The notes under the pieces were generated by a model that was given only the letters and a program-made list of their open reading frames with translations, had not been told where the DNA came from and made no database searches. A stretch of 63,960 nt of DNA, the filler included, from Octopus bimaculoides (lineage: Eukaryota): the NCBI RefSeq assembly GCF_001194135.2. It is 7 parts of 6 records of this genome, joined end to end, with 100 filler letters (N's around TTAATTAATTAA, not from the genome) between each part and the next. Parts side by side here need not be neighbours in the genome. Positions count along the whole stretch, not along the records: positions 4,566 to 31,892 come from NC_068987.1; 6 more parts are not named here. One strand, given 5' to 3'. Shown piece after piece: positions 1 through 27,721 of this stretch (its first letter is position 1; each line of letters starts with the position of its first letter). Position numbers and translations under genes: made by a program.

Positions 1-246
1 CGTCGTCGTCATCATCATCATCATCATTTTCATCATTATCGCTTAAGTAGATATTAGTTTTTACCGATACATTATCAACCTTATCAGGCTATAATAATGT
101 CTTTCAGATGATATCTGCTAAGGAAGAAGATATTAAAATAACAATATGATACTTTGGTTTGCTTCTTTTTTTAAAACAAAATCGTATACGTATAGGTTTA
201 TGTCACTCTGTATGTGTATATGCGTATCTACGTGTGTGCGTCTGCG

Positions 247-299
<53 letters not shown>

Positions 300-1603
300 A
301 TAAAAATGTGTGTATATATCTGTGTGAATATATATACATATAGTAGATAGATAGATAGATAGATAGATAGATATAAATATGTGTGTATGTGTGTGTGTGA
401 GTATGTATATATATGTATATGCATGTATGTATGTATGTATGTGTATGCATGATCTGTGTGTGTGAGAGAGTATGTATATATATATGTNNNNNNNNNNNNN
501 NNNNNNNNNNNNNNNNNNNNNNNNNNNNNNNNNNNNNNNNNNNNNNNNNNNNNNNNNNNNNNNNNNNNNNNNNNNNNNNNNNNNNNNNNNNNNNNNNNNN
601 NNNNNNNNNNNNNNNNNNNNNNNNNNNNNNNNNNNNNNNNNNNNNNNNNNNNNNNNNNNNNNNNNNNNNNNNNNNNNNNNNNNNNNNNNNNNNNNNNNNN
701 NNNNNNNNNNNNNNNNNNNNNNNNNNNNNNNNNNNNNNNNNNNNNNNNNNNNNNNNNNNNNNNNNNNNNNNNNNNNNNNNNNNNNNNNNNNNNNNNNNNN
801 NNNNNNNNNNNNNNNNNNNNNNNNNNNNNNNNNNNNNNNNNNNNNNNNNNNNNNNNNNNNNNNNNNNNNNNNNNNNNNNNNNNNNNNNNNNNNNNNNNNN
901 NNNNNNNNNNNNNNNNNNNNNNNNNNNNNNNNNNNNNNNNNNNNNNNNNNNNNNNNNNNNNNNNNNNNNNNNNNNNNNNNNNNNNNNNNNNNNNNNNNNN
1001 NNNNNNNNNNNNNNNNNNNNNNNNNNNNNNNNNNNNNNNNNNNNNNNNNNNNNNNNNNNNNNNNNNNNNNNNNNNNNNNNNNNNNNNNNNNNNNNNNNNN
1101 NNNNNNNNNNNNNNNNNNNNNNNNNNNNNNNNNNNNNNNNNNNNNNNNNNNNNNNNNNNNNNNNNNNNNNNNNNNNNNNNNNNNNNNNNNNNNNNNNNNN
1201 NNNNNNNNNNNNNNNNNNNNNNNNNNNNNNNNNNNNNNNNNNNNNNNNNNNNNNNNNNNNNNNNNNNNNNNNNNNNNNNNNNNNNNNNNNNNNNNNNNNN
1301 NNNNNNNNNNNNNNNNNNNNNNNNNNNNNNNNNNNNNNNNNNNNNNNNNNNNNNNNNNNNNNNNNNNNNNNNNNNNNNNNNNNNNNNNNNNNNNNNNNNN
1401 NNNNNNNNNNNNNNNNNNNNNNNNNNNNNNNNNNNNTGTGTGTGTGTGTGTGTGTGAGTGTGTGTGTGTGCGTGCAAACACACCCACATATAATTCTACA
1501 TACATGCACATACATACGGGCGTATTTATATGCGAGAGCATTGTTAATTTATATACGTGCTTTGTGGTGTATACAGGCCTGGTTAAGTGTGTATATGCAT
1601 CAT

Positions 1604-5672: not shown

Positions 5673-6541
5673 NNNNNNNNNNNNNNNNNNNNNNNNNNNN
5701 NNNNNNNNNNNNNNNNNNNNNNNNNNNNNNNNNNNNNNNNNNNNNNNNNNNNNNNNNNNNNNNNNNNNNNNNTTTAGATAAAATCCAAGACATATACATA
5801 TGTACGCACTTCAACCACACATATCTCCCATTAATACACCCATATTTTTGTTTTGTTACTTATTTTGCTAATATATATCAACATACATACACACGCACAC
5901 ATATATAGAAATATATGTGTATGTTGTATATGTGTCCATATGCTTGAGTCATATCTATGTATGAGTTTATGTATGTATCTATGTATACGCATATATTTAT
6001 ATATAGAGAGAGACAAAGAGGTGGGTGGAGAGAGAGATTGCTGAAAGACATCCTAAGCGACAAAGATTGAGAACTCACATTATAATTATTCTTCTACTCA
6101 GGTTACTATTTATAACTGTTTTATATTTCATTTAAATTAGCCGCTGGTGATCGTAAAATAGAGTGTCTTATGCCGTGATTATTTCGACGATAGTGTTTAA
6201 GTAAAACAGCCGTCTAACAACATTTATCTTTCGTTTCTGGTAAACTGATTGTTAAATAAAGGTATAGATTCAATTATGCTACTGTCAATGTCTTTACGAG
6301 TAAATCTCGTGTTGATTGTGTCTTAAAATAATTTGTTATCTAGCTAAGTATAAGTACACATGTATGTAAGTATGTATGTATGTATCTATGTATGTATGTA
6401 TGTATGTATGTACGTAGGTAGGTAGGTATATATGTATGTGTATGTACATATATGTGCCTGTATCAGTGTATGCAAATGATTATATACGTATGAATATATG
6501 TGAATATATACGTATATATATGTATATATACATACACACAC

Positions 6542-6581
<40 letters not shown>

Positions 6582-7099
6582 GTATATATATATATATATA
6601 TAATTCATATATATGTATATATATGTTTGTATGTGTGTATGTGTGTACATGTATATATGCGTGTGCGTGTGTATTTATATGTATGATACGTTGATTGAAA
6701 GATATTGAAATACGCATATATGTACATATATAAATATATATATATATATATACACACATAAATACATACATATATATATGCACCTATATTTATATTCATC
6801 TATACATACTGGCACATGTCTGTCTGTCTGTCTGTATGTATGTATGTATGTGTGTATGTATGTATGTATATATGTATGTATGCATTATCTATGTATAAAC
6901 GTATTTCTACGACACTTAATGCCACTGGATTTTTTATATTAATGTTTTACCACTTAGACAACCAATTGACTCTTTTGATGAATTACCTATCCACACAACA
7001 AACCCAGAATAGATTTTATCTTAAATTCATAGATATTTGAATATATTGTTTTAGAAAAAAATACACGGCTACATACATACGCTTATATAACTTTGGCAT

Positions 7100-8286: not shown

Positions 8287-8326
8287 CATCTATCTATCTA
8301 TCTATCTCTCTCTCTACATATATATG

Positions 8327-8387
<61 letters not shown>

Positions 8388-8400
8388 ATATGTATGTATG

Positions 8401-8491
<91 letters not shown>

Positions 8492-12066: not shown

Positions 12067-12097
<31 letters not shown>

Positions 12098-12703
12098 NNN
12101 NNNNNNNNNNNNNNNNNNNNNNNNNNNNNNNNNNNNNNNNNNNNNNNNNNNNNNNNNNNNNNNNNNNNNNNNNNNNNNNNNNNNNNNNNNNNNNNNNNNN
12201 NNNNNNNNNNNNNNNNNNNNNNNNNNNNNNNNNNNNNNNNNNNNNNNNNNNNNNNNNNNNNNNNNNNNNNNNNNNNNNNNNNNNNNNNNNNNNNNNNNNN
12301 NNNNNNNNNNNNNNNNNNNNNNNNNNNNNNNNNNNNNNNNNNNNNNNNNNNNNNNNNNNNNNNNNNNNNNNNNNNNNNNNNNNNNNNNNNNNNNNNNNNN
12401 NNNNNNNNNNNNNNNNNNNNNNNNNNNNNNNNNNNNNNNNNNNNNNNNNNNNNNNNNNNNNNNNNNNNNNNNNNNNNNNNNNNNNNNNNNNNNNNNNNNN
12501 NNNNNNNNNNNNNNNNNNNNNNNNNNNNNNNNNNNNNNNNNNNNNNNNNNNNNNNNNNNNNNNNNNNNNNNNNNNNNNNNNNNNNNNNNNNNNNNNNNNN
12601 NNNNNNNNNNNNNNNNNNNNNNNNNNNNNNNNNNNNNNNNNNNNNNNNNNNNNNNNNNNNNNNNNNNNNNNNNNNNNNNNNNNNNNNNNNNNNNNNNNNN
12701 NNN

Positions 12704-13260
12704 AAGTATATTTGCCATTTAAATGTGGCTGACCCCTAAGGGTGGATGATACTGTTGCTTTTAGCCCCAGGAGAACATCTCCTCCAGCTGGCTTATCGAC
12801 ACACATCTGTGTCCTGTCTATTTTTGCCAAGGGAAGTTATCCCTCCCCATCTTGATCTGCGATACGTTCGGACCCGTGTTTCAGGGTTATTTCCCTTCTT
12901 CAGCGTACGATAATCGCCGACCTTCGATGAGAAAGACAATCTCTTGGCAAAATATAAGTCTTTTTTCCAGTGAGGTTCTTCACTGATATCGAAAAAGTGA
13001 AAACAAGCAATGATAAATCTCTGAACGAGGTATTAACAGTAACTGCACGATGAAGTGAAGTATATTTGCCATTTGGGAGGGATAACCTCCCTTGGCAAAA
13101 ATAGACAGGACACAGATGTGTGTCGATAAGCCACCTGGAGGAGATGTTCTCCTGGGGCTAAAAGGAACAGTAACATCCACCCTTAGGGGTCAGCCACATT
13201 TAAATGGCAAATATACTTCACTTTATCGTGCAGTTACTGTTAATACCTCGTTCAGAGATT

Positions 13261-13261
<1 letters not shown>
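12704..13261 (-). mobile_element. Ribozyme-bearing fold-back element (Penelope pLTR / retrozyme-like, non-autonomous)
   Basis: 12704-12847 is the reverse complement of 13075-13218 (4 mismatches/144). 13015-13074 is the reverse complement of 13202-13261 (1 mismatch/60). HHR1 lies between them. Both flanks abut microsatellite/gap. Confidence 0.75.
12859..12917 (-). ncRNA. Type-I hammerhead ribozyme motif (HHR1)
   Basis: Minus strand reads GCGAU-UAU-CGUACG-CUGAAGA-AGGG-AAAUAA-CCCU-GAAA-C-ACGG-GUC/CGAACG-U-AUCGC. Intact core CUGAAGA/GAAA, 4-bp stem II, 2-bp stem III, GUC triplet, stem I 5/6 bp plus a 5-bp extension. Confidence 0.88.
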
Positions 13262-13299
<38 letters not shown>

Positions 13300-13815
13300 N
13301 NNNNNNNNNNNNNNNNNNNNNNNNNNNNNNNNNNNNNNNNNNNNNNNNNNNNNNNNNNNNNNNNNNNNNNNNNNNNNNNNNNNNNNNNNNNNNNNNNNNN
13401 NNNNNNNNNNNNNNNNNNNNNNNNNNNNNNNNNNNNNNNNNNNNNNNNNNNNNNNNNNNNNNNNNNNNNNNNNNNNNNNNNNNNNNNNNNNNNNNNNNNN
13501 NNNNNNNNNNNNNNNNNNNNNNNNNNNNNNNNNNNNNNNNNNNNNNNNNNNNNNNNNNNNNNNNNNNNNNNNNNNNNNNNNNNNNNNNNNNNNNNNNNNN
13601 NNNNNNNNNNNNNNNNNNNNNNNNNNNNNNNNNNNNNNNNNNNNNNNNNNNNNNNNNNNNNNNNNNNNNNNNNNNNNNNNNNNNNNNNNNNNNNNNNNNN
13701 NNNNNNNNNNNNNNNNNNNNNNNNNNNNNNNNNNNNNNNNNNNNNNNNNNNNNNNNNNNNNNNNNNNNNNNNNNNNNNNNNNNNNNNNNNNNNNNNNNNN
13801 NNNNNNNNNNNNNNN

Positions 13816-23699: not shown

Positions 23700-24324
23700 T
23701 TCTGTGGCAAGGGTGTTAGCGTAGCATCAACAAATAAGCCCGTGTCTGTAGTGTGACCTTGCGTGCCCGGATGCTGCATGCATGATTACCTTTGTTTGAG
23801 AGTTGAGTAGTTGTCACAATGGTTGCATGCAGTTTATGCGAAGTAGTGCGTGGTTTAGCAACGACTAATGATTCCATACCGAATTATCTCTTTACAGTGT
23901 TGTTTTTAAGCGCTTTCTTACCAATCCTCCAACCCATACCACGTCATTTCTTTCATGTAAATTTCTCTCATGTGGTGCTGTTGAACGCGTCCACAGGCTT
24001 AATGTATCACATGGATGTAGTTCCTATGTCTGCTGATTGTTCAGCGTTGTAGCGGCAGCGCCAAAAAGATAGTATATCCACTGAGACCTTTTTGGTGCGT
24101 TCAAAATTCACATACCCACCACCCATATTTCCATGACAAGGTCATGAGCTGCAATATTCCAAACAGGCTCATGACATGTCACTTAGTCAAATTAGCCCTT
24201 CATTTAACCACAAATGTTTTGTCATCAATGCTGCATTCCCCCGTATCACATGTTTCAACTTAAATGTACCATATATATAAACGATGCCATTTAAATCTGG
24301 AGCAACACCGGGTGTGACTGCTAG
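23700..24324 (+). mobile_element. Putative non-autonomous Helitron (3' end confident, 5' end uncertain)
   Basis: Terminates in gagcaacaccgggtgtgactgCTAG-T, the GC-rich subterminal motif plus CTRR end typical of Helitrons. Confidence 0.55.
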
Positions 24325-24356
<32 letters not shown>

Positions 24357-24360
24357 TATA

Positions 24361-24443
<83 letters not shown>

Positions 24444-24459
24444 GTATGTATCTATTATA

Positions 24460-25442
24460 CGACGTGGTTTCAAGAAGTTCCCGGACTAGTTATTTTTAAT
24501 AAAAAATAAGTTATCTACCTAAGAGTAGCATCAACAAATATGCCCGTGTCTGTAATGTGACCTTGCGTGCGCGGATGTTGTATACAGGATTGCTTTCGTT
24601 TGGGAGCTGAGGGTTTGAGATACGTCACATCCTTCGAAATAGCCACCTTGCGCTGCGATACATCGGTCCCAGCGTTCGTGCCACGTTTGGAATCCGGTCT
24701 GGAAATCTATTTCCGAAGCGAGTCGAGGACCTTTTGCAGTTCGCTCTAGAATTCAACAACGACTTTAAAAACGGCAACCTTTGAGCTATCTTTTCCTTTT
24801 GGGGAAGAAATGGAAGTCCGCAAATTATAAATCTGGCGAATAGGATGTGTGTGGAAGCAAAATTTTGTTGCATTTGGCGAGAAATTCGCGAGTGACGAGA
24901 ACTCTATGAGAGGGTGTATTGTCTTTGCGAAGAATCCAATACTTTGCGCTCCACAGGTCCGGTCGCTTTCGCCAAATGTCCTCCCTCAAACGCTTCAAAA
25001 TATCGCAGCAGAACTCTTGATTGACGGTCTGGCCCTGGGGGATGATTTCTCGATGTACAATACCGCAGATGTCGACAAAAACGAAGAGCATGGTCTTGAT
25101 GAGCTACGGCTCTGTGGTATTTTCTTCGGTAGTAAAGGTGAAGGGCTCTCACATTGTGATGACAACTTTCGTCTCAGCGTTGTAACCAAAGCATGCTCAA
25201 TGTCTCTGTAAAAGAAATACCCAGTTTAACGCAAAAGTTCCAAATTCCTGTCAATGACAAAATCTCAGAGTATAGCATACACGTGATCACAAAAGCACTA
25301 ATTCCACAACTTTAGAAGTAAATACAGCGATGTCACTCAGCACACTGCTTCTTGAATGTCACTACTAACCTTCAGTGCGCACGCCACCGTACGCTGTTGC
25401 CGCGCTACAGAACTGCTCCCGAAGCATTTTGATACCACCTCG
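24460..25442 (-). mobile_element. Internally deleted mariner (DD34D-type) element
   Basis: TIRs cgacgtggtttcaagaagttc / gaagcattttgataccacctcg with TA flanks. N-terminal FCVKLGISFTETLSML jumps (about 25190) into the catalytic domain GIVHREIIPQGQTVNQEF..WILRKDNTPSH..YSPDL. Confidence 0.9.
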
Positions 25443-27052
25443 TATATATANNNNNNNNNNNNNNNNNNNNNNNNNNNNNNNNNNNNNNNNNNNNNNNNNN
25501 NNNNNNNNNNNNNNNNNNNNNNNNNNNNNNNNNNNNNNNNNNNNNNNNNNNNNNNNNNNNNNNNNNNNNNNNNNNNNNNNNNNNNNNNNNNNNNNNNNNN
25601 NNNNNNNNNNNNNNNNNNNNNNNNNNNNNNNNNNNNNNNNNNNNNNNNNNNNNNNNNNNNNNNNNNNNNNNNNNNNNNNNNNNNNNNNNNNNNNNNNNNN
25701 NNNNNNNNNNNNNNNNNNNNNNNNNNNNNNNNNNNNNNNNNNNNNNNNNNNNNNNNNNNNNNNNNNNNNNNNNNNNNNNNNNNNNNNNNNNNNNNNNNNN
25801 NNNNNNNNNNNNNNNNNNNNNNNNNNNNNNNNNNNNNNNNNNNNNNNNNNNNNNNNNNNNNNNNNNNNNNNNNNNNNNNNNNNNNNNNNNNNNNNNNNNN
25901 NNNNNNNNNNNNNNNNNNNNNNNNNNNNNTATATATATACAAGATGAATTATATTTACAGGTCAGAAATGCATGATGGATTATTTTCAGTATAAATTCAC
26001 ACATCATCCACTTAGCGCATTCGAGCCATGCATGTAAATATCTTATTTTAGAAGATGTATAAAGAGGGAAAAGGGACTTTAATTTTAGGCCTTTGCATGT
26101 AAGTCCTCTCGAAACTATATTTCTTATCTCTCTCCTTTGTCAATGTTAATTTCAACCGTTCGTATTTTGTTTGCTATCTCAGAAATATTAGTAATAATGG
26201 AATATTATTCAGCATAGTTGACTTAACTTCATTGTCTTAATTTATGCTAATGAATTACAATAATTCTTACAAATCCTTACAATGAACCATTTTACCAGGT
26301 TTACTTTTAATTATACAAGTTGCCAAAAGATTTTGTACATACATGAGGTTCTAATCTTCGGCACGGCAGTTTCTTATTATGCCAATGAGTTTCAAAATAC
26401 ACCAAAACATGTGTCCACATTTCCTTCCACCCTACACGCAAGAAGCAGACTTTCACTTTTTTAACATAAAAAATCTACGAAGTTGTTCTATATTAGTTTA
26501 AAATATCTTCCATTTTAGATATAATTGGAACGCATTTATAAATTTATTGCGAATCCAATGCAATGCCCAAAATTCCATAAATACTTCTGTGAGTATGTGT
26601 GTAAGAGAGAGGGAGAGGTCTCAAAGTAGGTTTACAGTTATTCAACTATCTCCTTCGTATTCATATATTAACAGTTTAGATTTTAATTATAAAATATATG
26701 AAACCATTTAATTAGTTGTAAAATAGAAATTTAAATGTAATAAAATGTTCTAAAAGAAATTGAACGTGTTTAATTGATAACTCTAAGCCTAATTTTGGGA
26801 CAGCCTGTATAGTTTCTTCATAAAATTTGTATAAATGTTAACCTGATGACGTGAGTTTCCCACTTCAGCAAATGTCTCATTAATATTCTTAAAATTTAAG
26901 CATTAATAACACAAATTTAATATTTCTGTAAACATTTATACATACACAAACCGAAACAGACGCACACATACACGCACGCACGCACACACACGCACATACA
27001 TACATATACATGCATATACATACATGCATACATGCGTACCCGTATATGTATG

Positions 27053-27095
<43 letters not shown>

Positions 27096-27721
27096 ATATA
27101 TATACATACATATTTACATTCATTCATAGACACAAATAGATCTATCTACACGTGCGCGCACATATATATATATATATATATACACAACAGACTTATACAT
27201 GAAGGATTATTAATAATCCGGGCAAAATGCTTTATAATGTCTCTATTGGTACACCAGTCTAACAGTATTGTTTAGATTAATAAAGGTGTCCGTGTATACT
27301 TGTGATAGCGTCTGCGGTTATAATTCTTCACCATTTAATATTGTAAATCCATGGTTCTGTTCCATGTTTAGCGGTTCTTACATATAATGTTATACAAGAC
27401 AAGGCATAAATAAACGGTGATTTTATATTTTTCTTTGTTGCTATAAATTGCAAAGTTACGGAGACATGAACACACCAACAGCTTTGCAGAGGTAAGATGC
27501 TATTCTCATTCACTATTTTTTTTCCTATCATACCTTTATTAATTTAGTGATTCTTCTGTGGATTAGGATTATTTTGTCTTTTATTTTTAACGAAACAGGT
27601 GCTTATATGGTACACTAGTATATATAAACATATTTATATATCTCATATATACAATTATTAATTTTGCATGTATGGCTTTTACCCTCGCGGCCACAACGGT
27701 ATTAGTTTTAGGAATAATAAT

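What the first reader, a model, noticed from the sequence alone, without database searches (positions are those of the whole stretch)
12704..13261. 354-nt ribozyme-bearing unit copied past unit length plus a 5' fold-back: footprint of a circular or tandem RNA template
Seen: on the minus strand the order is inverted(B+D), D, M, HHR1, B, D (running into the gap). D starts at plus 13074 and again at 12720, a 354-nt period. The arms differ by 4/144 and 1/60 bases, arguing against a simple collapsed-read artefact. Known: PLE insertions commonly carry inverted or tandem pLTRs, and metazoan retrozymes are a few hundred nt, hammerhead-processed and circularise. Inference: reverse transcription of a 354-nt circular or multimeric RNA followed by a template switch, i.e. 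an octopus retrozyme-like family.
Basis: partly seen in the sequence, partly recalled or inferred. Interest (0 to 1): 0.9.

Follow-up and report, generated by a model that had tools for sequence, protein, structure and literature searches.

The report
Hammerhead-ribozyme retrozyme-type repeat, head-to-head copy
A 596-base island between two assembly gaps holds just over one copy of a 354-base non-coding repeat with a genuine type I hammerhead ribozyme, joined head-to-head to a partial inverted copy; this matches the already described animal "non-LTR retrozymes" and the way Penelope-like retroelements insert, so it is at most a new family of a known kind.

Summary
12704-13074 is 371 nt of one polarity, which is a 354-nt unit plus 17 nt. 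13075-13265 is an inverted partial copy with 6 mismatches in 191, and it ends in a (CA)n run. The minus strand carries a canonical type I hammerhead (12917-12855, cut between 12871 and 12870).

- **Ribozyme evidence against:** Rfam's hammerhead models do not report it.
- **Ribozyme evidence for:** an explicit descriptor finds 1 hit against 0.007 expected by chance. A covariance model built only from four experimentally validated retrozyme hammerheads finds it as the single significant hit (18.1 bits, E about 6.5e-4).
- **Fit to retrozymes:** unit length, 43% GC, no coding capacity and a well-folded circular form all match metazoan non-LTR retrozymes.
- **Fit to Penelope-like insertions:** the head-to-head inverted 5'-truncated copy next to a microsatellite is their known signature. 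It suits priming on both target strands better than a snap-back.

Limits:
- Only 17 nt run past unit length, and only one ribozyme is visible.
- No related sequence could be retrieved, so copy number, permuted copies and RNA circles are untested. The host organism was not verified either.

Verdict: real, probably a new family of a known kind, modest interest.

The parts
12704..13074 (-). Sense-polarity segment, 371 nt = one 354-nt unit plus 17 nt. In unit coordinates (1 = first base after the ribozyme cut, 12870) it runs 151..354, 1..167 and continues into the left gap.
   Evidence: Direct repeat 12704-12720 = 13058-13074 (17/17), spacing 354.
12855..12917 (-). Type I hammerhead ribozyme. Helix I is 6 bp (one A.A mismatch), then an internal loop and further pairs. 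Core CUGAAGA (12903-12897). Helix II is 4 bp with loop AAAUAA (12896-12883). GAAA (12882-12879). Helix III is 2 bp with tetraloop ACGG. GUC (12873-12871). Predicted cut between 12871 and 12870.
   Evidence: MFE fold gives the three-way junction. Descriptor: 1 hit vs 0.007 expected. CM from 4 validated retrozyme hammerheads: 18.1 bits, E 6.5e-4, full length. Rfam models: no hit.
13075..13265 (+). Inverted, 5'-truncated partial copy; its own sense strand is the window's plus strand. It covers unit positions 24-214, lacks the ribozyme and differs from the other copy at 6 of 191 positions. Its 5' end sits at the head-to-head junction and its 3' end at the microsatellite.
13065..13099 (.). Head-to-head junction (13074|13075) embedded in a hairpin-forming stretch: TTTGCCA-TTT-GGGAGG-GATAA-CCTCCC-T-TGGCAAA. 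The unit's own GGGAGG/CCTCCC hairpin is extended by a 7-nt complementarity between the end of X and the inverted Y.
   Evidence: (DNA fold -11.3 kcal/mol) and direct reading.
13263..13299 (.). (CA)n microsatellite directly abutting the 3' end of the inverted copy and running into the right gap. It may be the target site.
   Evidence: Only 6.7% of positions in the piece lie in or within 5 nt of a perfect microsatellite of 20 nt or more.
12098..12703 (.). Assembly gap (606 N) into which the sense copy runs. It would hold any further units and any second ribozyme. Its right edge is the only gap edge here that breaks inside the repeat rather than in a microsatellite.
13300..13815 (.). Assembly gap (516 N) to the right of the (CA)n run.

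Best explanation
The island is a genomic copy of a short, non-coding, hammerhead-bearing retroelement of the metazoan non-LTR retrozyme type.

Shown:
- There is a 354-nt closing unit with one canonical type I hammerhead on the minus strand.
- A sense segment of 1.05 units reads through the ribozyme cut site.
- A 191-nt inverted, 5'-truncated second copy is joined to it 5'-end to 5'-end and ends in a (CA)n run.

Inferred:
- The unit is transcribed from tandem copies, cut by the ribozyme to unit length and possibly ligated into a circle.
- A longer-than-unit RNA (multimer or circle) was reverse-transcribed at a nicked target by the RT/GIY-YIG enzyme of an autonomous Penelope-like element.
- The inverted copy arose because that enzyme primes on both target strands. 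One cDNA would cover unit positions 24-214 and the other would start at position 151, leaving a 64-nt inverted overlap. The two cDNAs were then joined head-to-head.
- The 3% difference between the arms is later divergence, or difference between neighbouring source units.
For: - **Ribozyme:** the core is CUGAAGA / GAAAC / GUC. The three-way junction is recovered by unconstrained folding. The descriptor gives 1 hit vs 0.007 expected. The CM built only from coral, mussel and axolotl retrozyme hammerheads gives a single full-length hit of 18.1 bits, E 6.5e-4. Helix III (2 bp plus a tetraloop) is the same as in mussel Mg353 and axolotl Ax353.
- **Retrozyme traits:** the unit is 354 nt, against 150-450 bp in general and 350-390 bp in mussel (PMC7229834). 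GC is 43%. There is no ORF over 96 aa, no Pfam hit and no tRNA part. The circular sense monomer folds at z = -3.2, the antisense at z = -1.8.
- **Template longer than a unit:** the sense copy is uninterrupted across 12871|12870 and closes on itself, and the inverted copy bridges Z-X-Y.
- **PLE-type integration:** an inverted 5'-truncated copy at the 5' end, partial tandems and a microsatellite bias are described for PLEs (PMC8557442). A purified PLE protein cleaves and extends both target strands and initiates internally on the RNA (PMC11167929). Retrozymes are argued to be non-autonomous PLE derivatives (bioRxiv 10.64898/2026.07.22.740005). Penelope elements are abundant in octopus genomes.
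- **Multi-copy hint:** the contig's left end is the only gap edge here that breaks inside the repeat rather than in a microsatellite.
Against: - Rfam's curated hammerhead models give no hit even on 86 bases at E<=10.
- This ribozyme copy departs from the validated ones. It has A-U instead of G-C at 10.1-11.1, an A.A mismatch in helix I, and a non-palindromic tetraloop (ACGG), whereas all four validated examples have palindromic loops. It may be a decayed copy.
- Only one ribozyme and only 17 nt past unit length are visible.
- No second copy exists in the piece and no relative was found in any collection. Family status, copy number and tandem arrays are therefore unproven.
- There is no similarity to published retrozymes outside the ribozyme core.
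- Neither end of either segment coincides with the ribozyme cut site.
- Adjacency to a microsatellite has about a 7% chance expectation in this microsatellite-rich piece.
- The island is tied to its scaffold only across gaps.
- The host organism was not verified.
Confidence: 0.55

Rival explanations
1. One reading: a single reverse-transcription run on a 354-nt circular or multimeric RNA went past unit length, then switched template onto its own nascent cDNA (fold-back) to make the inverted part.
For: The sense copy crosses the cut site and closes on itself. The inverted copy could have been copied from the Z-X-Y stretch of the same nascent strand. The junction lies in a hairpin-prone stretch with 7-nt complementarity. 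The published retrozyme model predicts cDNAs longer than a unit from circles.
Against: A snap-back gives arms that abut at the junction, but here they are 127 or 227 nt apart. The 3' end of the would-be primer (..CCATTT) does not pair with the template next to 12847 (direct reading). The arms differ at 6 of 191 positions. Priming on both strands is experimentally documented for a PLE enzyme, whereas this kind of switch is not.
Confidence: 0.15
2. A DNA-level tandem (satellite-like) array of a ribozyme-bearing repeat that suffered a local inversion or recombination. The arrangement would say nothing about reverse transcription.
For: Hammerhead repeats were first seen as 'satellite' DNA, and large arrays exist. 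The period closes at 354. The sense copy runs into a 606-N gap that could hold more units. The arms differ by 3%, as neighbouring array units might.
Against: The inverted segment ends cleanly in a (CA)n run after 191 nt instead of continuing as an inverted array. The head-to-head, 5'-truncated geometry is the specific PLE insertion signature. Only 1.05 units are actually seen.
Confidence: 0.12
3. Short-read assembly artefact: a chimeric or mis-joined small repeat contig placed in a scaffold gap, so the genome contains no such junction.
For: The island is only 596 nt, is flanked by gaps on both sides, and is made almost entirely of repeat. PLE-type tandem and inverted structures are known to break short-read assemblies. 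The longest perfect inverted match between the arms is 50 nt, enough to tangle a low-k graph.
Against: The arms carry 6 differences, so they are separate copies. The two sides of 13074|13075 share no overlap that could cause a k-mer mis-join, and the junction is not at the centre of either small palindrome in the unit. Even if the junction were false, the ribozyme-bearing unit would still be real sequence.
Confidence: 0.1
4. A fragment of the pseudo-LTR or UTR of an autonomous Penelope-like element whose ORF lies in the gaps or has been deleted.
For: PLE pLTRs carry hammerheads and form partial tandems with inverted copies. Retrozymes and pLTRs are homologous in Xenopus.
Against: The sequence closes on itself after 354 nt, not after an element of 3 kb or more. 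No RT or GIY-YIG remnant was found in 143 open stretches of at least 53 aa across the piece. The gaps are estimated at 606 and 516 nt. The ribozyme is the canonical kind with helix III and loops, not the minimal kind reported for PLEs.
Confidence: 0.08

Closest known systems
Metazoan non-LTR retrozymes (Cervera & de la Pena 2020, NAR, PMC7229834), e.g. the mussel Mytilus galloprovincialis 350-390 bp repeats and axolotl Rtz_353
   Same: Type I hammerhead with CUGANGA / GAAAC / RUH and a 2-bp helix III closed by a tetraloop. Unit of about 350 nt, GC below 45-50%, no coding capacity, no LTR/PBS/PPT. The predicted circular RNA is strongly self-paired. The sequence reads through the cut site as in tandem copies.
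   Different: Only 1.05 units and a single ribozyme are visible, so tandem organisation is inferred rather than seen. There is no similarity outside the ribozyme. The tetraloop is not palindromic and 10.1-11.1 is A-U. Copy number, expression and circularity are untested. An inverted partner copy is not part of the published retrozyme description.
Penelope-like element insertions (Penelope/Poseidon/Neptune; Evgen'ev & Arkhipova; Craig et al. 2021, PMC8557442; Frangieh et al. 2024, PMC11167929)
   Same: A partial tandem plus an adjacent inverted 5'-truncated copy, a microsatellite at the insertion edge, a hammerhead in the repeated non-coding part, and difficulty for short-read assemblers.
   Different: No RT/GIY-YIG ORF or remnant was found in the piece. 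The period is 354 nt. The ribozyme is canonical rather than minimal. The 30-40 bp 'tail' cannot be assessed.
Newt satellite 2 / Schistosoma Sm-alpha / cave-cricket pDo500 hammerhead repeats (established knowledge; newt repeats summarised in PMC7229834)
   Same: Repeats of about 330 nt transcribed and cut by a type I hammerhead with a weak helix III.
   Different: Those are large arrays with demonstrated transcripts. Here there is one interrupted copy and no expression data.
L1 twin-priming inversions (Ostertag & Kazazian 2001; recalled from knowledge, not tested here)
   Same: A 5' inverted segment and a 3' direct segment meeting by their 5' ends, with a short overlap of template positions (64 nt here).
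   Different: A different enzyme class and no poly(A). The template here must exceed unit length.

Membership tests
Hammerhead ribozyme, type I | Conserved catalytic core CUGANGA / GAAA(Y) / RUH in the right order | tested here: met
   CUGAAGA 12903-12897, GAAAC 12882-12878, GUC 12873-12871 on the minus strand. These are the same criteria used by Cervera & de la Pena (suppl. legend S1).
Hammerhead ribozyme, type I | Three helices around the core with helix I open (type I topology) | tested here: met
   Unconstrained MFE fold gives the three-way junction. Descriptor requiring helices I, II and III: 1 hit vs 0.007 expected.
Hammerhead ribozyme, type I | Match to Rfam's curated hammerhead covariance models | tested here: not met
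   No hammerhead family reported at E<=1 on the piece, or at E<=10 on 596 nt or on 86 nt.
Hammerhead ribozyme, type I | Match to a model of experimentally validated retrozyme hammerheads | tested here: met
   CM R1 from coral Amil224, mussel Mg353, axolotl Ax353 and Ax330 (one loop-2 A removed from Ax330 to keep register). Single full-length hit 12855-12917(-), 18.1 bits, E 6.5e-4 (rough calibration); next hit 9.4 bits.
Hammerhead ribozyme, type I | Compensatory changes in the helices across family members | not testable with these tools
   No second copy of the ribozyme in the window and no relatives retrievable.
Hammerhead ribozyme, type I | Self-cleavage at the predicted site | not testable with these tools
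   Needs in vitro transcription of monomer and dimer constructs.
Metazoan non-LTR retrozyme | Unit of about 150-450 bp, low GC (<50%), no LTR/PBS/PPT, no coding capacity | tested here: met
   354 nt, 43% GC. Longest open frame through a tandem unit is 96 aa with no Pfam hit. No tRNA-like part.
Metazoan non-LTR retrozyme | Tandem copies, so that two ribozymes flank a unit (dimer to multimer) | tested here: inconclusive
   The sense copy is 371 nt (1.05 units) with one ribozyme, then a 606-N gap. Closure of the period rests on 17 nt plus the bridging inverted copy.
Metazoan non-LTR retrozyme | Multi-copy, dispersed family in the genome | not testable with these tools
   No animal genome collection is on hand. 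DNA pattern scans of metagenome, prokaryote and viral collections gave 0 hits. Protein-route look-ups are uninformative because the window's own ORFs are not indexed.
Metazoan non-LTR retrozyme | Stable, highly self-paired predicted circular RNA | tested here: met
   Circular sense monomer -101.7 kcal/mol, 63% paired, z = -3.2 (1 of 200 shuffles as low); antisense z = -1.8.
Metazoan non-LTR retrozyme | Expressed as unit-length linear and circular RNAs | not testable with these tools
   Needs northern blots / RNase R / divergent-primer RT-PCR.
Metazoan non-LTR retrozyme | Co-occurrence with autonomous PLEs in the same genome | not tested
   Literature only: Penelope families are abundant in Octopus genomes and Naiads occur in Octopus spp.. 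The host of this window was not verified.
Penelope-like element (autonomous copy or its pLTR) | RT plus GIY-YIG endonuclease ORF | tested here: not met
   No RVT or GIY-YIG hit in 143 stop-free stretches of at least 53 aa from all six frames of the piece. The only real hit is a mariner-type Transposase_1 fragment.
Penelope-like element (autonomous copy or its pLTR) | Partial tandem with an adjacent inverted 5'-truncated copy; microsatellite target | tested here: met
   Head-to-head junction at 13074|13075. The inverted copy covers unit positions 24-214 and ends in (CA)n. Microsatellite adjacency has a chance expectation of about 0.07.
Penelope-like element (autonomous copy or its pLTR) | Minimal hammerhead variant (no helix III / no loop-loop contacts) | tested here: not met
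   This ribozyme has a 2-bp helix III with a tetraloop, a 6-nt loop 2 and an internal loop in helix I. That is the retrozyme kind.

The most novel reading that the evidence does not exclude
This locus may preserve the integration scar of a retrozyme RNA longer than one unit being inserted by Penelope-like machinery with priming on both target strands. The scar would consist of an inverted 5'-truncated twin, a 64-nt overlap of template positions and a microsatellite target. So far this is argued only from co-occurrence and sequence relatedness. It would also add cephalopods to the animals likely to make ribozyme-derived circular RNAs.
Probability: 0.3. Interest if true: 0.5.

Novelty: new member of a known kind. 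Interest (0 to 1): 0.3.

Why it matters
Animal non-LTR retrozymes are abundant sources of small circular RNAs, and their mobilising enzyme is still inferred rather than shown. A family whose insertions carry Penelope-specific scars (tandem overshoot, inverted 5'-truncated partner, microsatellite target) would give that inference a direct structural test.

In the searchable literature I found no paper that links hammerheads or retrozymes with cephalopods. A detailed Octopus vulgaris repeat annotation does not mention them, so the family may be sitting among unclassified repeats.

As a single interrupted copy in a gapped short-read scaffold, this locus alone adds little. The kind of element, its ribozyme and the proposed mechanism are all already described.

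Tried and rejected
- **Rfam scans** at three scales (27 kb, 596 nt, 86 nt) gave no hammerhead. All strong hits in the piece are microsatellite false positives for miRNA families.
- **Route to related DNA through proteins.** The 96-aa open frame through the tandem unit had no homologues. Exact look-ups of two unit ORFs found nothing. Exact look-ups of the two longest ORFs of the piece also found nothing, which shows this assembly is not in that index, so these negatives say nothing about copy number.
- **DNA pattern scans** with a 26-mer of the ribozyme and a 28-mer of the arm in the metagenome, prokaryotic-genome and viral collections gave 0 hits. These collections are not expected to hold animal repeats.
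- **Host identification** through the mariner transposase remnant found no homologues.
- **Alignments A1 and A2** of the published ribozymes were out of register and were not used. A3 was used after removing one loop-2 A from Ax330.
- **tRNA-derived SINE** rejected: no tRNA-like sequence.
- **Simple snap-back hairpin** rejected: the arms do not abut.
- **Strand switch of a de Bruijn path at a palindrome** rejected: the junction is not at the centre of either small palindrome (GCCA(C)ATTTAAATGGC or GGGAGG..CCTCCC).
- **Second ribozyme of either polarity** rejected: one descriptor hit and one CM hit only.
- **The search of protein representatives** was not run, because its hits cannot be traced to DNA here.

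Full report
**1. What is there**

The finding lies in a 596-nt contig (12704-13299) bounded by N gaps of 606 and 516. On the plus strand it reads as follows.

| Segment | Coordinates | Length |
|---|---|---|
| X | 12704-12720 | 17 |
| Y | 12721-12847 | 127 |
| M | 12848-13010 | 163 |
| Z | 13011-13057 | 47 |
| X again | 13058-13074 | 17 (17/17 identical, spacing 354) |
| reverse complement of Z+X+Y | 13075-13265 | 191 (6 mismatches) |
| (CA)n, running into the gap | 13263-13299 | 37 |

The part that runs 'past unit length' is only the 17-nt X next to the gap. The period is otherwise supported because the inverted copy has Z-X-Y contiguous while the direct copy has X-Y-M-Z-X. BLASTN at word size 7 finds the unit nowhere else in the 27-kb piece.

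**2. The ribozyme**

The minus strand reads ...AUCGUACG CUGAAGA AGGG-AAAUAA-CCCU GAAAC-ACGG-GUC | CGAACGUAUCG....

- **Rfam.** No hammerhead family is reported on the whole piece, on the island, or on 86 bases at E<=10. I therefore did not rely on Rfam.
- **Folding.** Unconstrained folding of 12925-12850(-) returns the three-way junction.
- **Descriptor.** It demands CUGANGA, a helix II of at least 4 bp, GAAA, A15.1-U16.1 plus at least one more pair, UH, and at least 5 of 6 pairs in helix I. It finds exactly this site in the piece, against 0.007 hits per Markov-1 random piece.
- **Comparison with real family members.** I took the four experimentally validated retrozyme constructs printed in Supplementary Table 2 of Cervera & de la Pena 2020 and aligned their ribozymes (A3). 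One loop-2 A of Ax330 was removed to keep the core in register. I built a covariance model without the candidate and scanned the piece with filters off. The candidate is the only significant hit: full length, 18.1 bits, E about 6.5e-4 with rough calibration. The next hit scores 9.4 bits and lacks the core.
- **Helix III.** It has 2 bp plus a tetraloop, as in mussel Mg353 (GCGC) and axolotl Ax353 (ACGU).
- **Departures from the validated ribozymes.** The tetraloop ACGG is not palindromic, while all four validated loops are. Position 10.1-11.1 is A-U. Helix I has one A.A mismatch. This copy may be slightly decayed, and its activity needs a bench test.

**3. The unit**

- GC is 43% against 34.5% for the piece.
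- The longest open frame through a tandem unit is 96 aa and has no Pfam match.
- There is no tRNA-like part.
- As a circle delimited by the ribozyme cut, the sense RNA folds to -101.7 kcal/mol, z = -3.2. The antisense gives z = -1.8.
- Outside the ribozyme there is no similarity to the published coral, mussel or axolotl retrozymes.
- These traits match the published description of metazoan non-LTR retrozymes: type I hammerhead, 150-450 bp units, low GC, no LTR/PBS/PPT, self-paired circles, and 350-390 bp in mussel.

**4. Geometry of the two copies**

Unit coordinates start at 1 = 12870, the first base after the cut.

- The sense segment starts at position 151 at the junction (13074), runs through 354/1 without interruption, and reaches 167 at the gap.
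- The inverted segment covers 24-214. Its 5' end is at the junction (13075) and its 3' end at the (CA)n run.
- The two segments therefore meet 5' end to 5' end and share template positions 151-214 (64 nt) in inverted orientation.
- A snap-back of a nascent strand would give abutting arms. Here the arms are 127 or 227 nt apart, and the 3' end of X does not pair next to 12847.
- The geometry is what two primings on opposite target strands of one longer-than-unit RNA would give.
- It also matches what is described for Penelope-like elements: a partial tandem with an adjacent inverted 5'-truncated copy, a microsatellite bias and trouble for short-read assemblers.
- A purified PLE protein cleaves and extends both target strands, initiates internally on the RNA and does not need ribozyme cleavage for insertion in vitro.
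- Neither segment end coincides with the ribozyme cut. The inverted copy's 5' end is 23 nt downstream of it, which is not compelling.
- The junction lies in a hairpin-prone stretch, 13065-13099, at -11.3 kcal/mol as DNA.
- Microsatellite adjacency is weak evidence, because 6.7% of positions in this piece qualify.

**5. Surroundings**

- There is no RT or GIY-YIG remnant in 143 stop-free stretches of at least 53 aa from all six frames. The only real domain hit is a mariner-type transposase fragment at 24828-25103(-).
- Most gap edges in this scaffold are microsatellites. The island's left edge is not. It breaks inside the repeat, which is what a multi-copy repeat does to a short-read assembler. 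This is a hint, not proof.

**6. What could not be done**

- No animal genome collection is available.
- DNA pattern scans of the metagenome, prokaryote and viral collections found nothing.
- The protein routes found nothing.
- The window's own long ORFs are not indexed, so those negatives do not bear on copy number.
- The host could not be verified.
- Copy number, permuted or tandem copies elsewhere, covariation in the ribozyme, expression and circularity are all untested.

**7. Comparison with what is known, and novelty**

- The kind of element, its ribozyme and the idea that an RT on a circular or multimeric template yields cDNAs longer than one unit are all published.
- The link to PLEs has been argued from co-occurrence and from pLTR homology.
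- Penelope elements are abundant in octopus genomes.
- I found no paper tying hammerheads or retrozymes to cephalopods.
- The most this can be is a new family of a known kind.
- The one feature worth following up is the PLE-type scar on a retrozyme-type insertion. If it is general, it would bear on who mobilises these elements.

**8. Verdict**

The family assignment is plausible (about 0.55-0.65). The 'fold-back by template switch' is less likely than two-strand priming or a second insertion. Circular and multimeric templates cannot be told apart here.
- An assembly artefact is unlikely to explain the junction, but it cannot be excluded without reads.
- Interest is modest (0.3).

Noticed in passing
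window 24828-25103 (-): Fragment of a mariner-type transposase (Pfam Transposase_1, E 1.3e-6, 28.6 bits vs cutoff 24) in a short open stretch: a decayed DNA transposon unrelated to the finding. A protein search with it found no homologues.
   Followed up: partly
window 23718-23807 and 24522-24611: Two direct copies of a 90-nt sequence, 86% identical, 804 nt apart (family D14), lying just left of the mariner remnant. Nature unknown.
   Followed up: no
window 4566-31892, e.g. 6493-6674, 8289-8460, 24324-24394, 26984-27110: Dozens of sub-threshold Rfam 'miRNA' hits (mir-297, mir-5014, mir-3149, mir-466 and others) all fall on (TG)n/(TA)n/(TATG)n microsatellites and are false positives. Perfect microsatellites of 12 nt or more make up 7.5% of the non-N bases.
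   Followed up: yes
gap edges at 12097, 13299/13816, 16606, 25450/25930, 28179/28294: Almost every assembly gap in this scaffold is bordered by a (TA)n, (CA)n or (GA)n run, so the gaps are microsatellite failures of a short-read assembler. The left edge of the island (12704) is an exception: it falls inside the repeat unit.
   Followed up: yes
window 12874-12877 (-), helix III tetraloop: The tetraloop ACGG is one U-to-G change away from the palindromic ACGU of the axolotl Ax353 ribozyme. All four experimentally validated retrozyme hammerheads have palindromic tetraloops, which allow dimeric helix III. Restoring U lowers the predicted energy of both forms, from -17.8 to -19.5 kcal/mol for the monomer and from -37.4 to -40.8 kcal/mol for the dimer.
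   Followed up: partly
window 12714-12729 and 13193-13208; 12831-12847 and 13075-13091: The unit contains two small palindromes. GCCA(C)ATTTAAATGGC is centred exactly on the X/Y boundary. GGGAGG-loop-CCTCCC lies at the Y/M boundary, and the 5' end of the inverted copy sits exactly at the base of this second hairpin. Whether either marks a preferred stop or start of reverse transcription is unknown.
   Followed up: no
window 13032-13064 (-) and 13207-13244 (+): Weak hits (9.4 and 7.4 bits) of the retrozyme-hammerhead model to the Z/X part of both copies. They match only the helix I flanks of the axolotl sequences and have no catalytic core, so they are taken as chance.
   Followed up: yes
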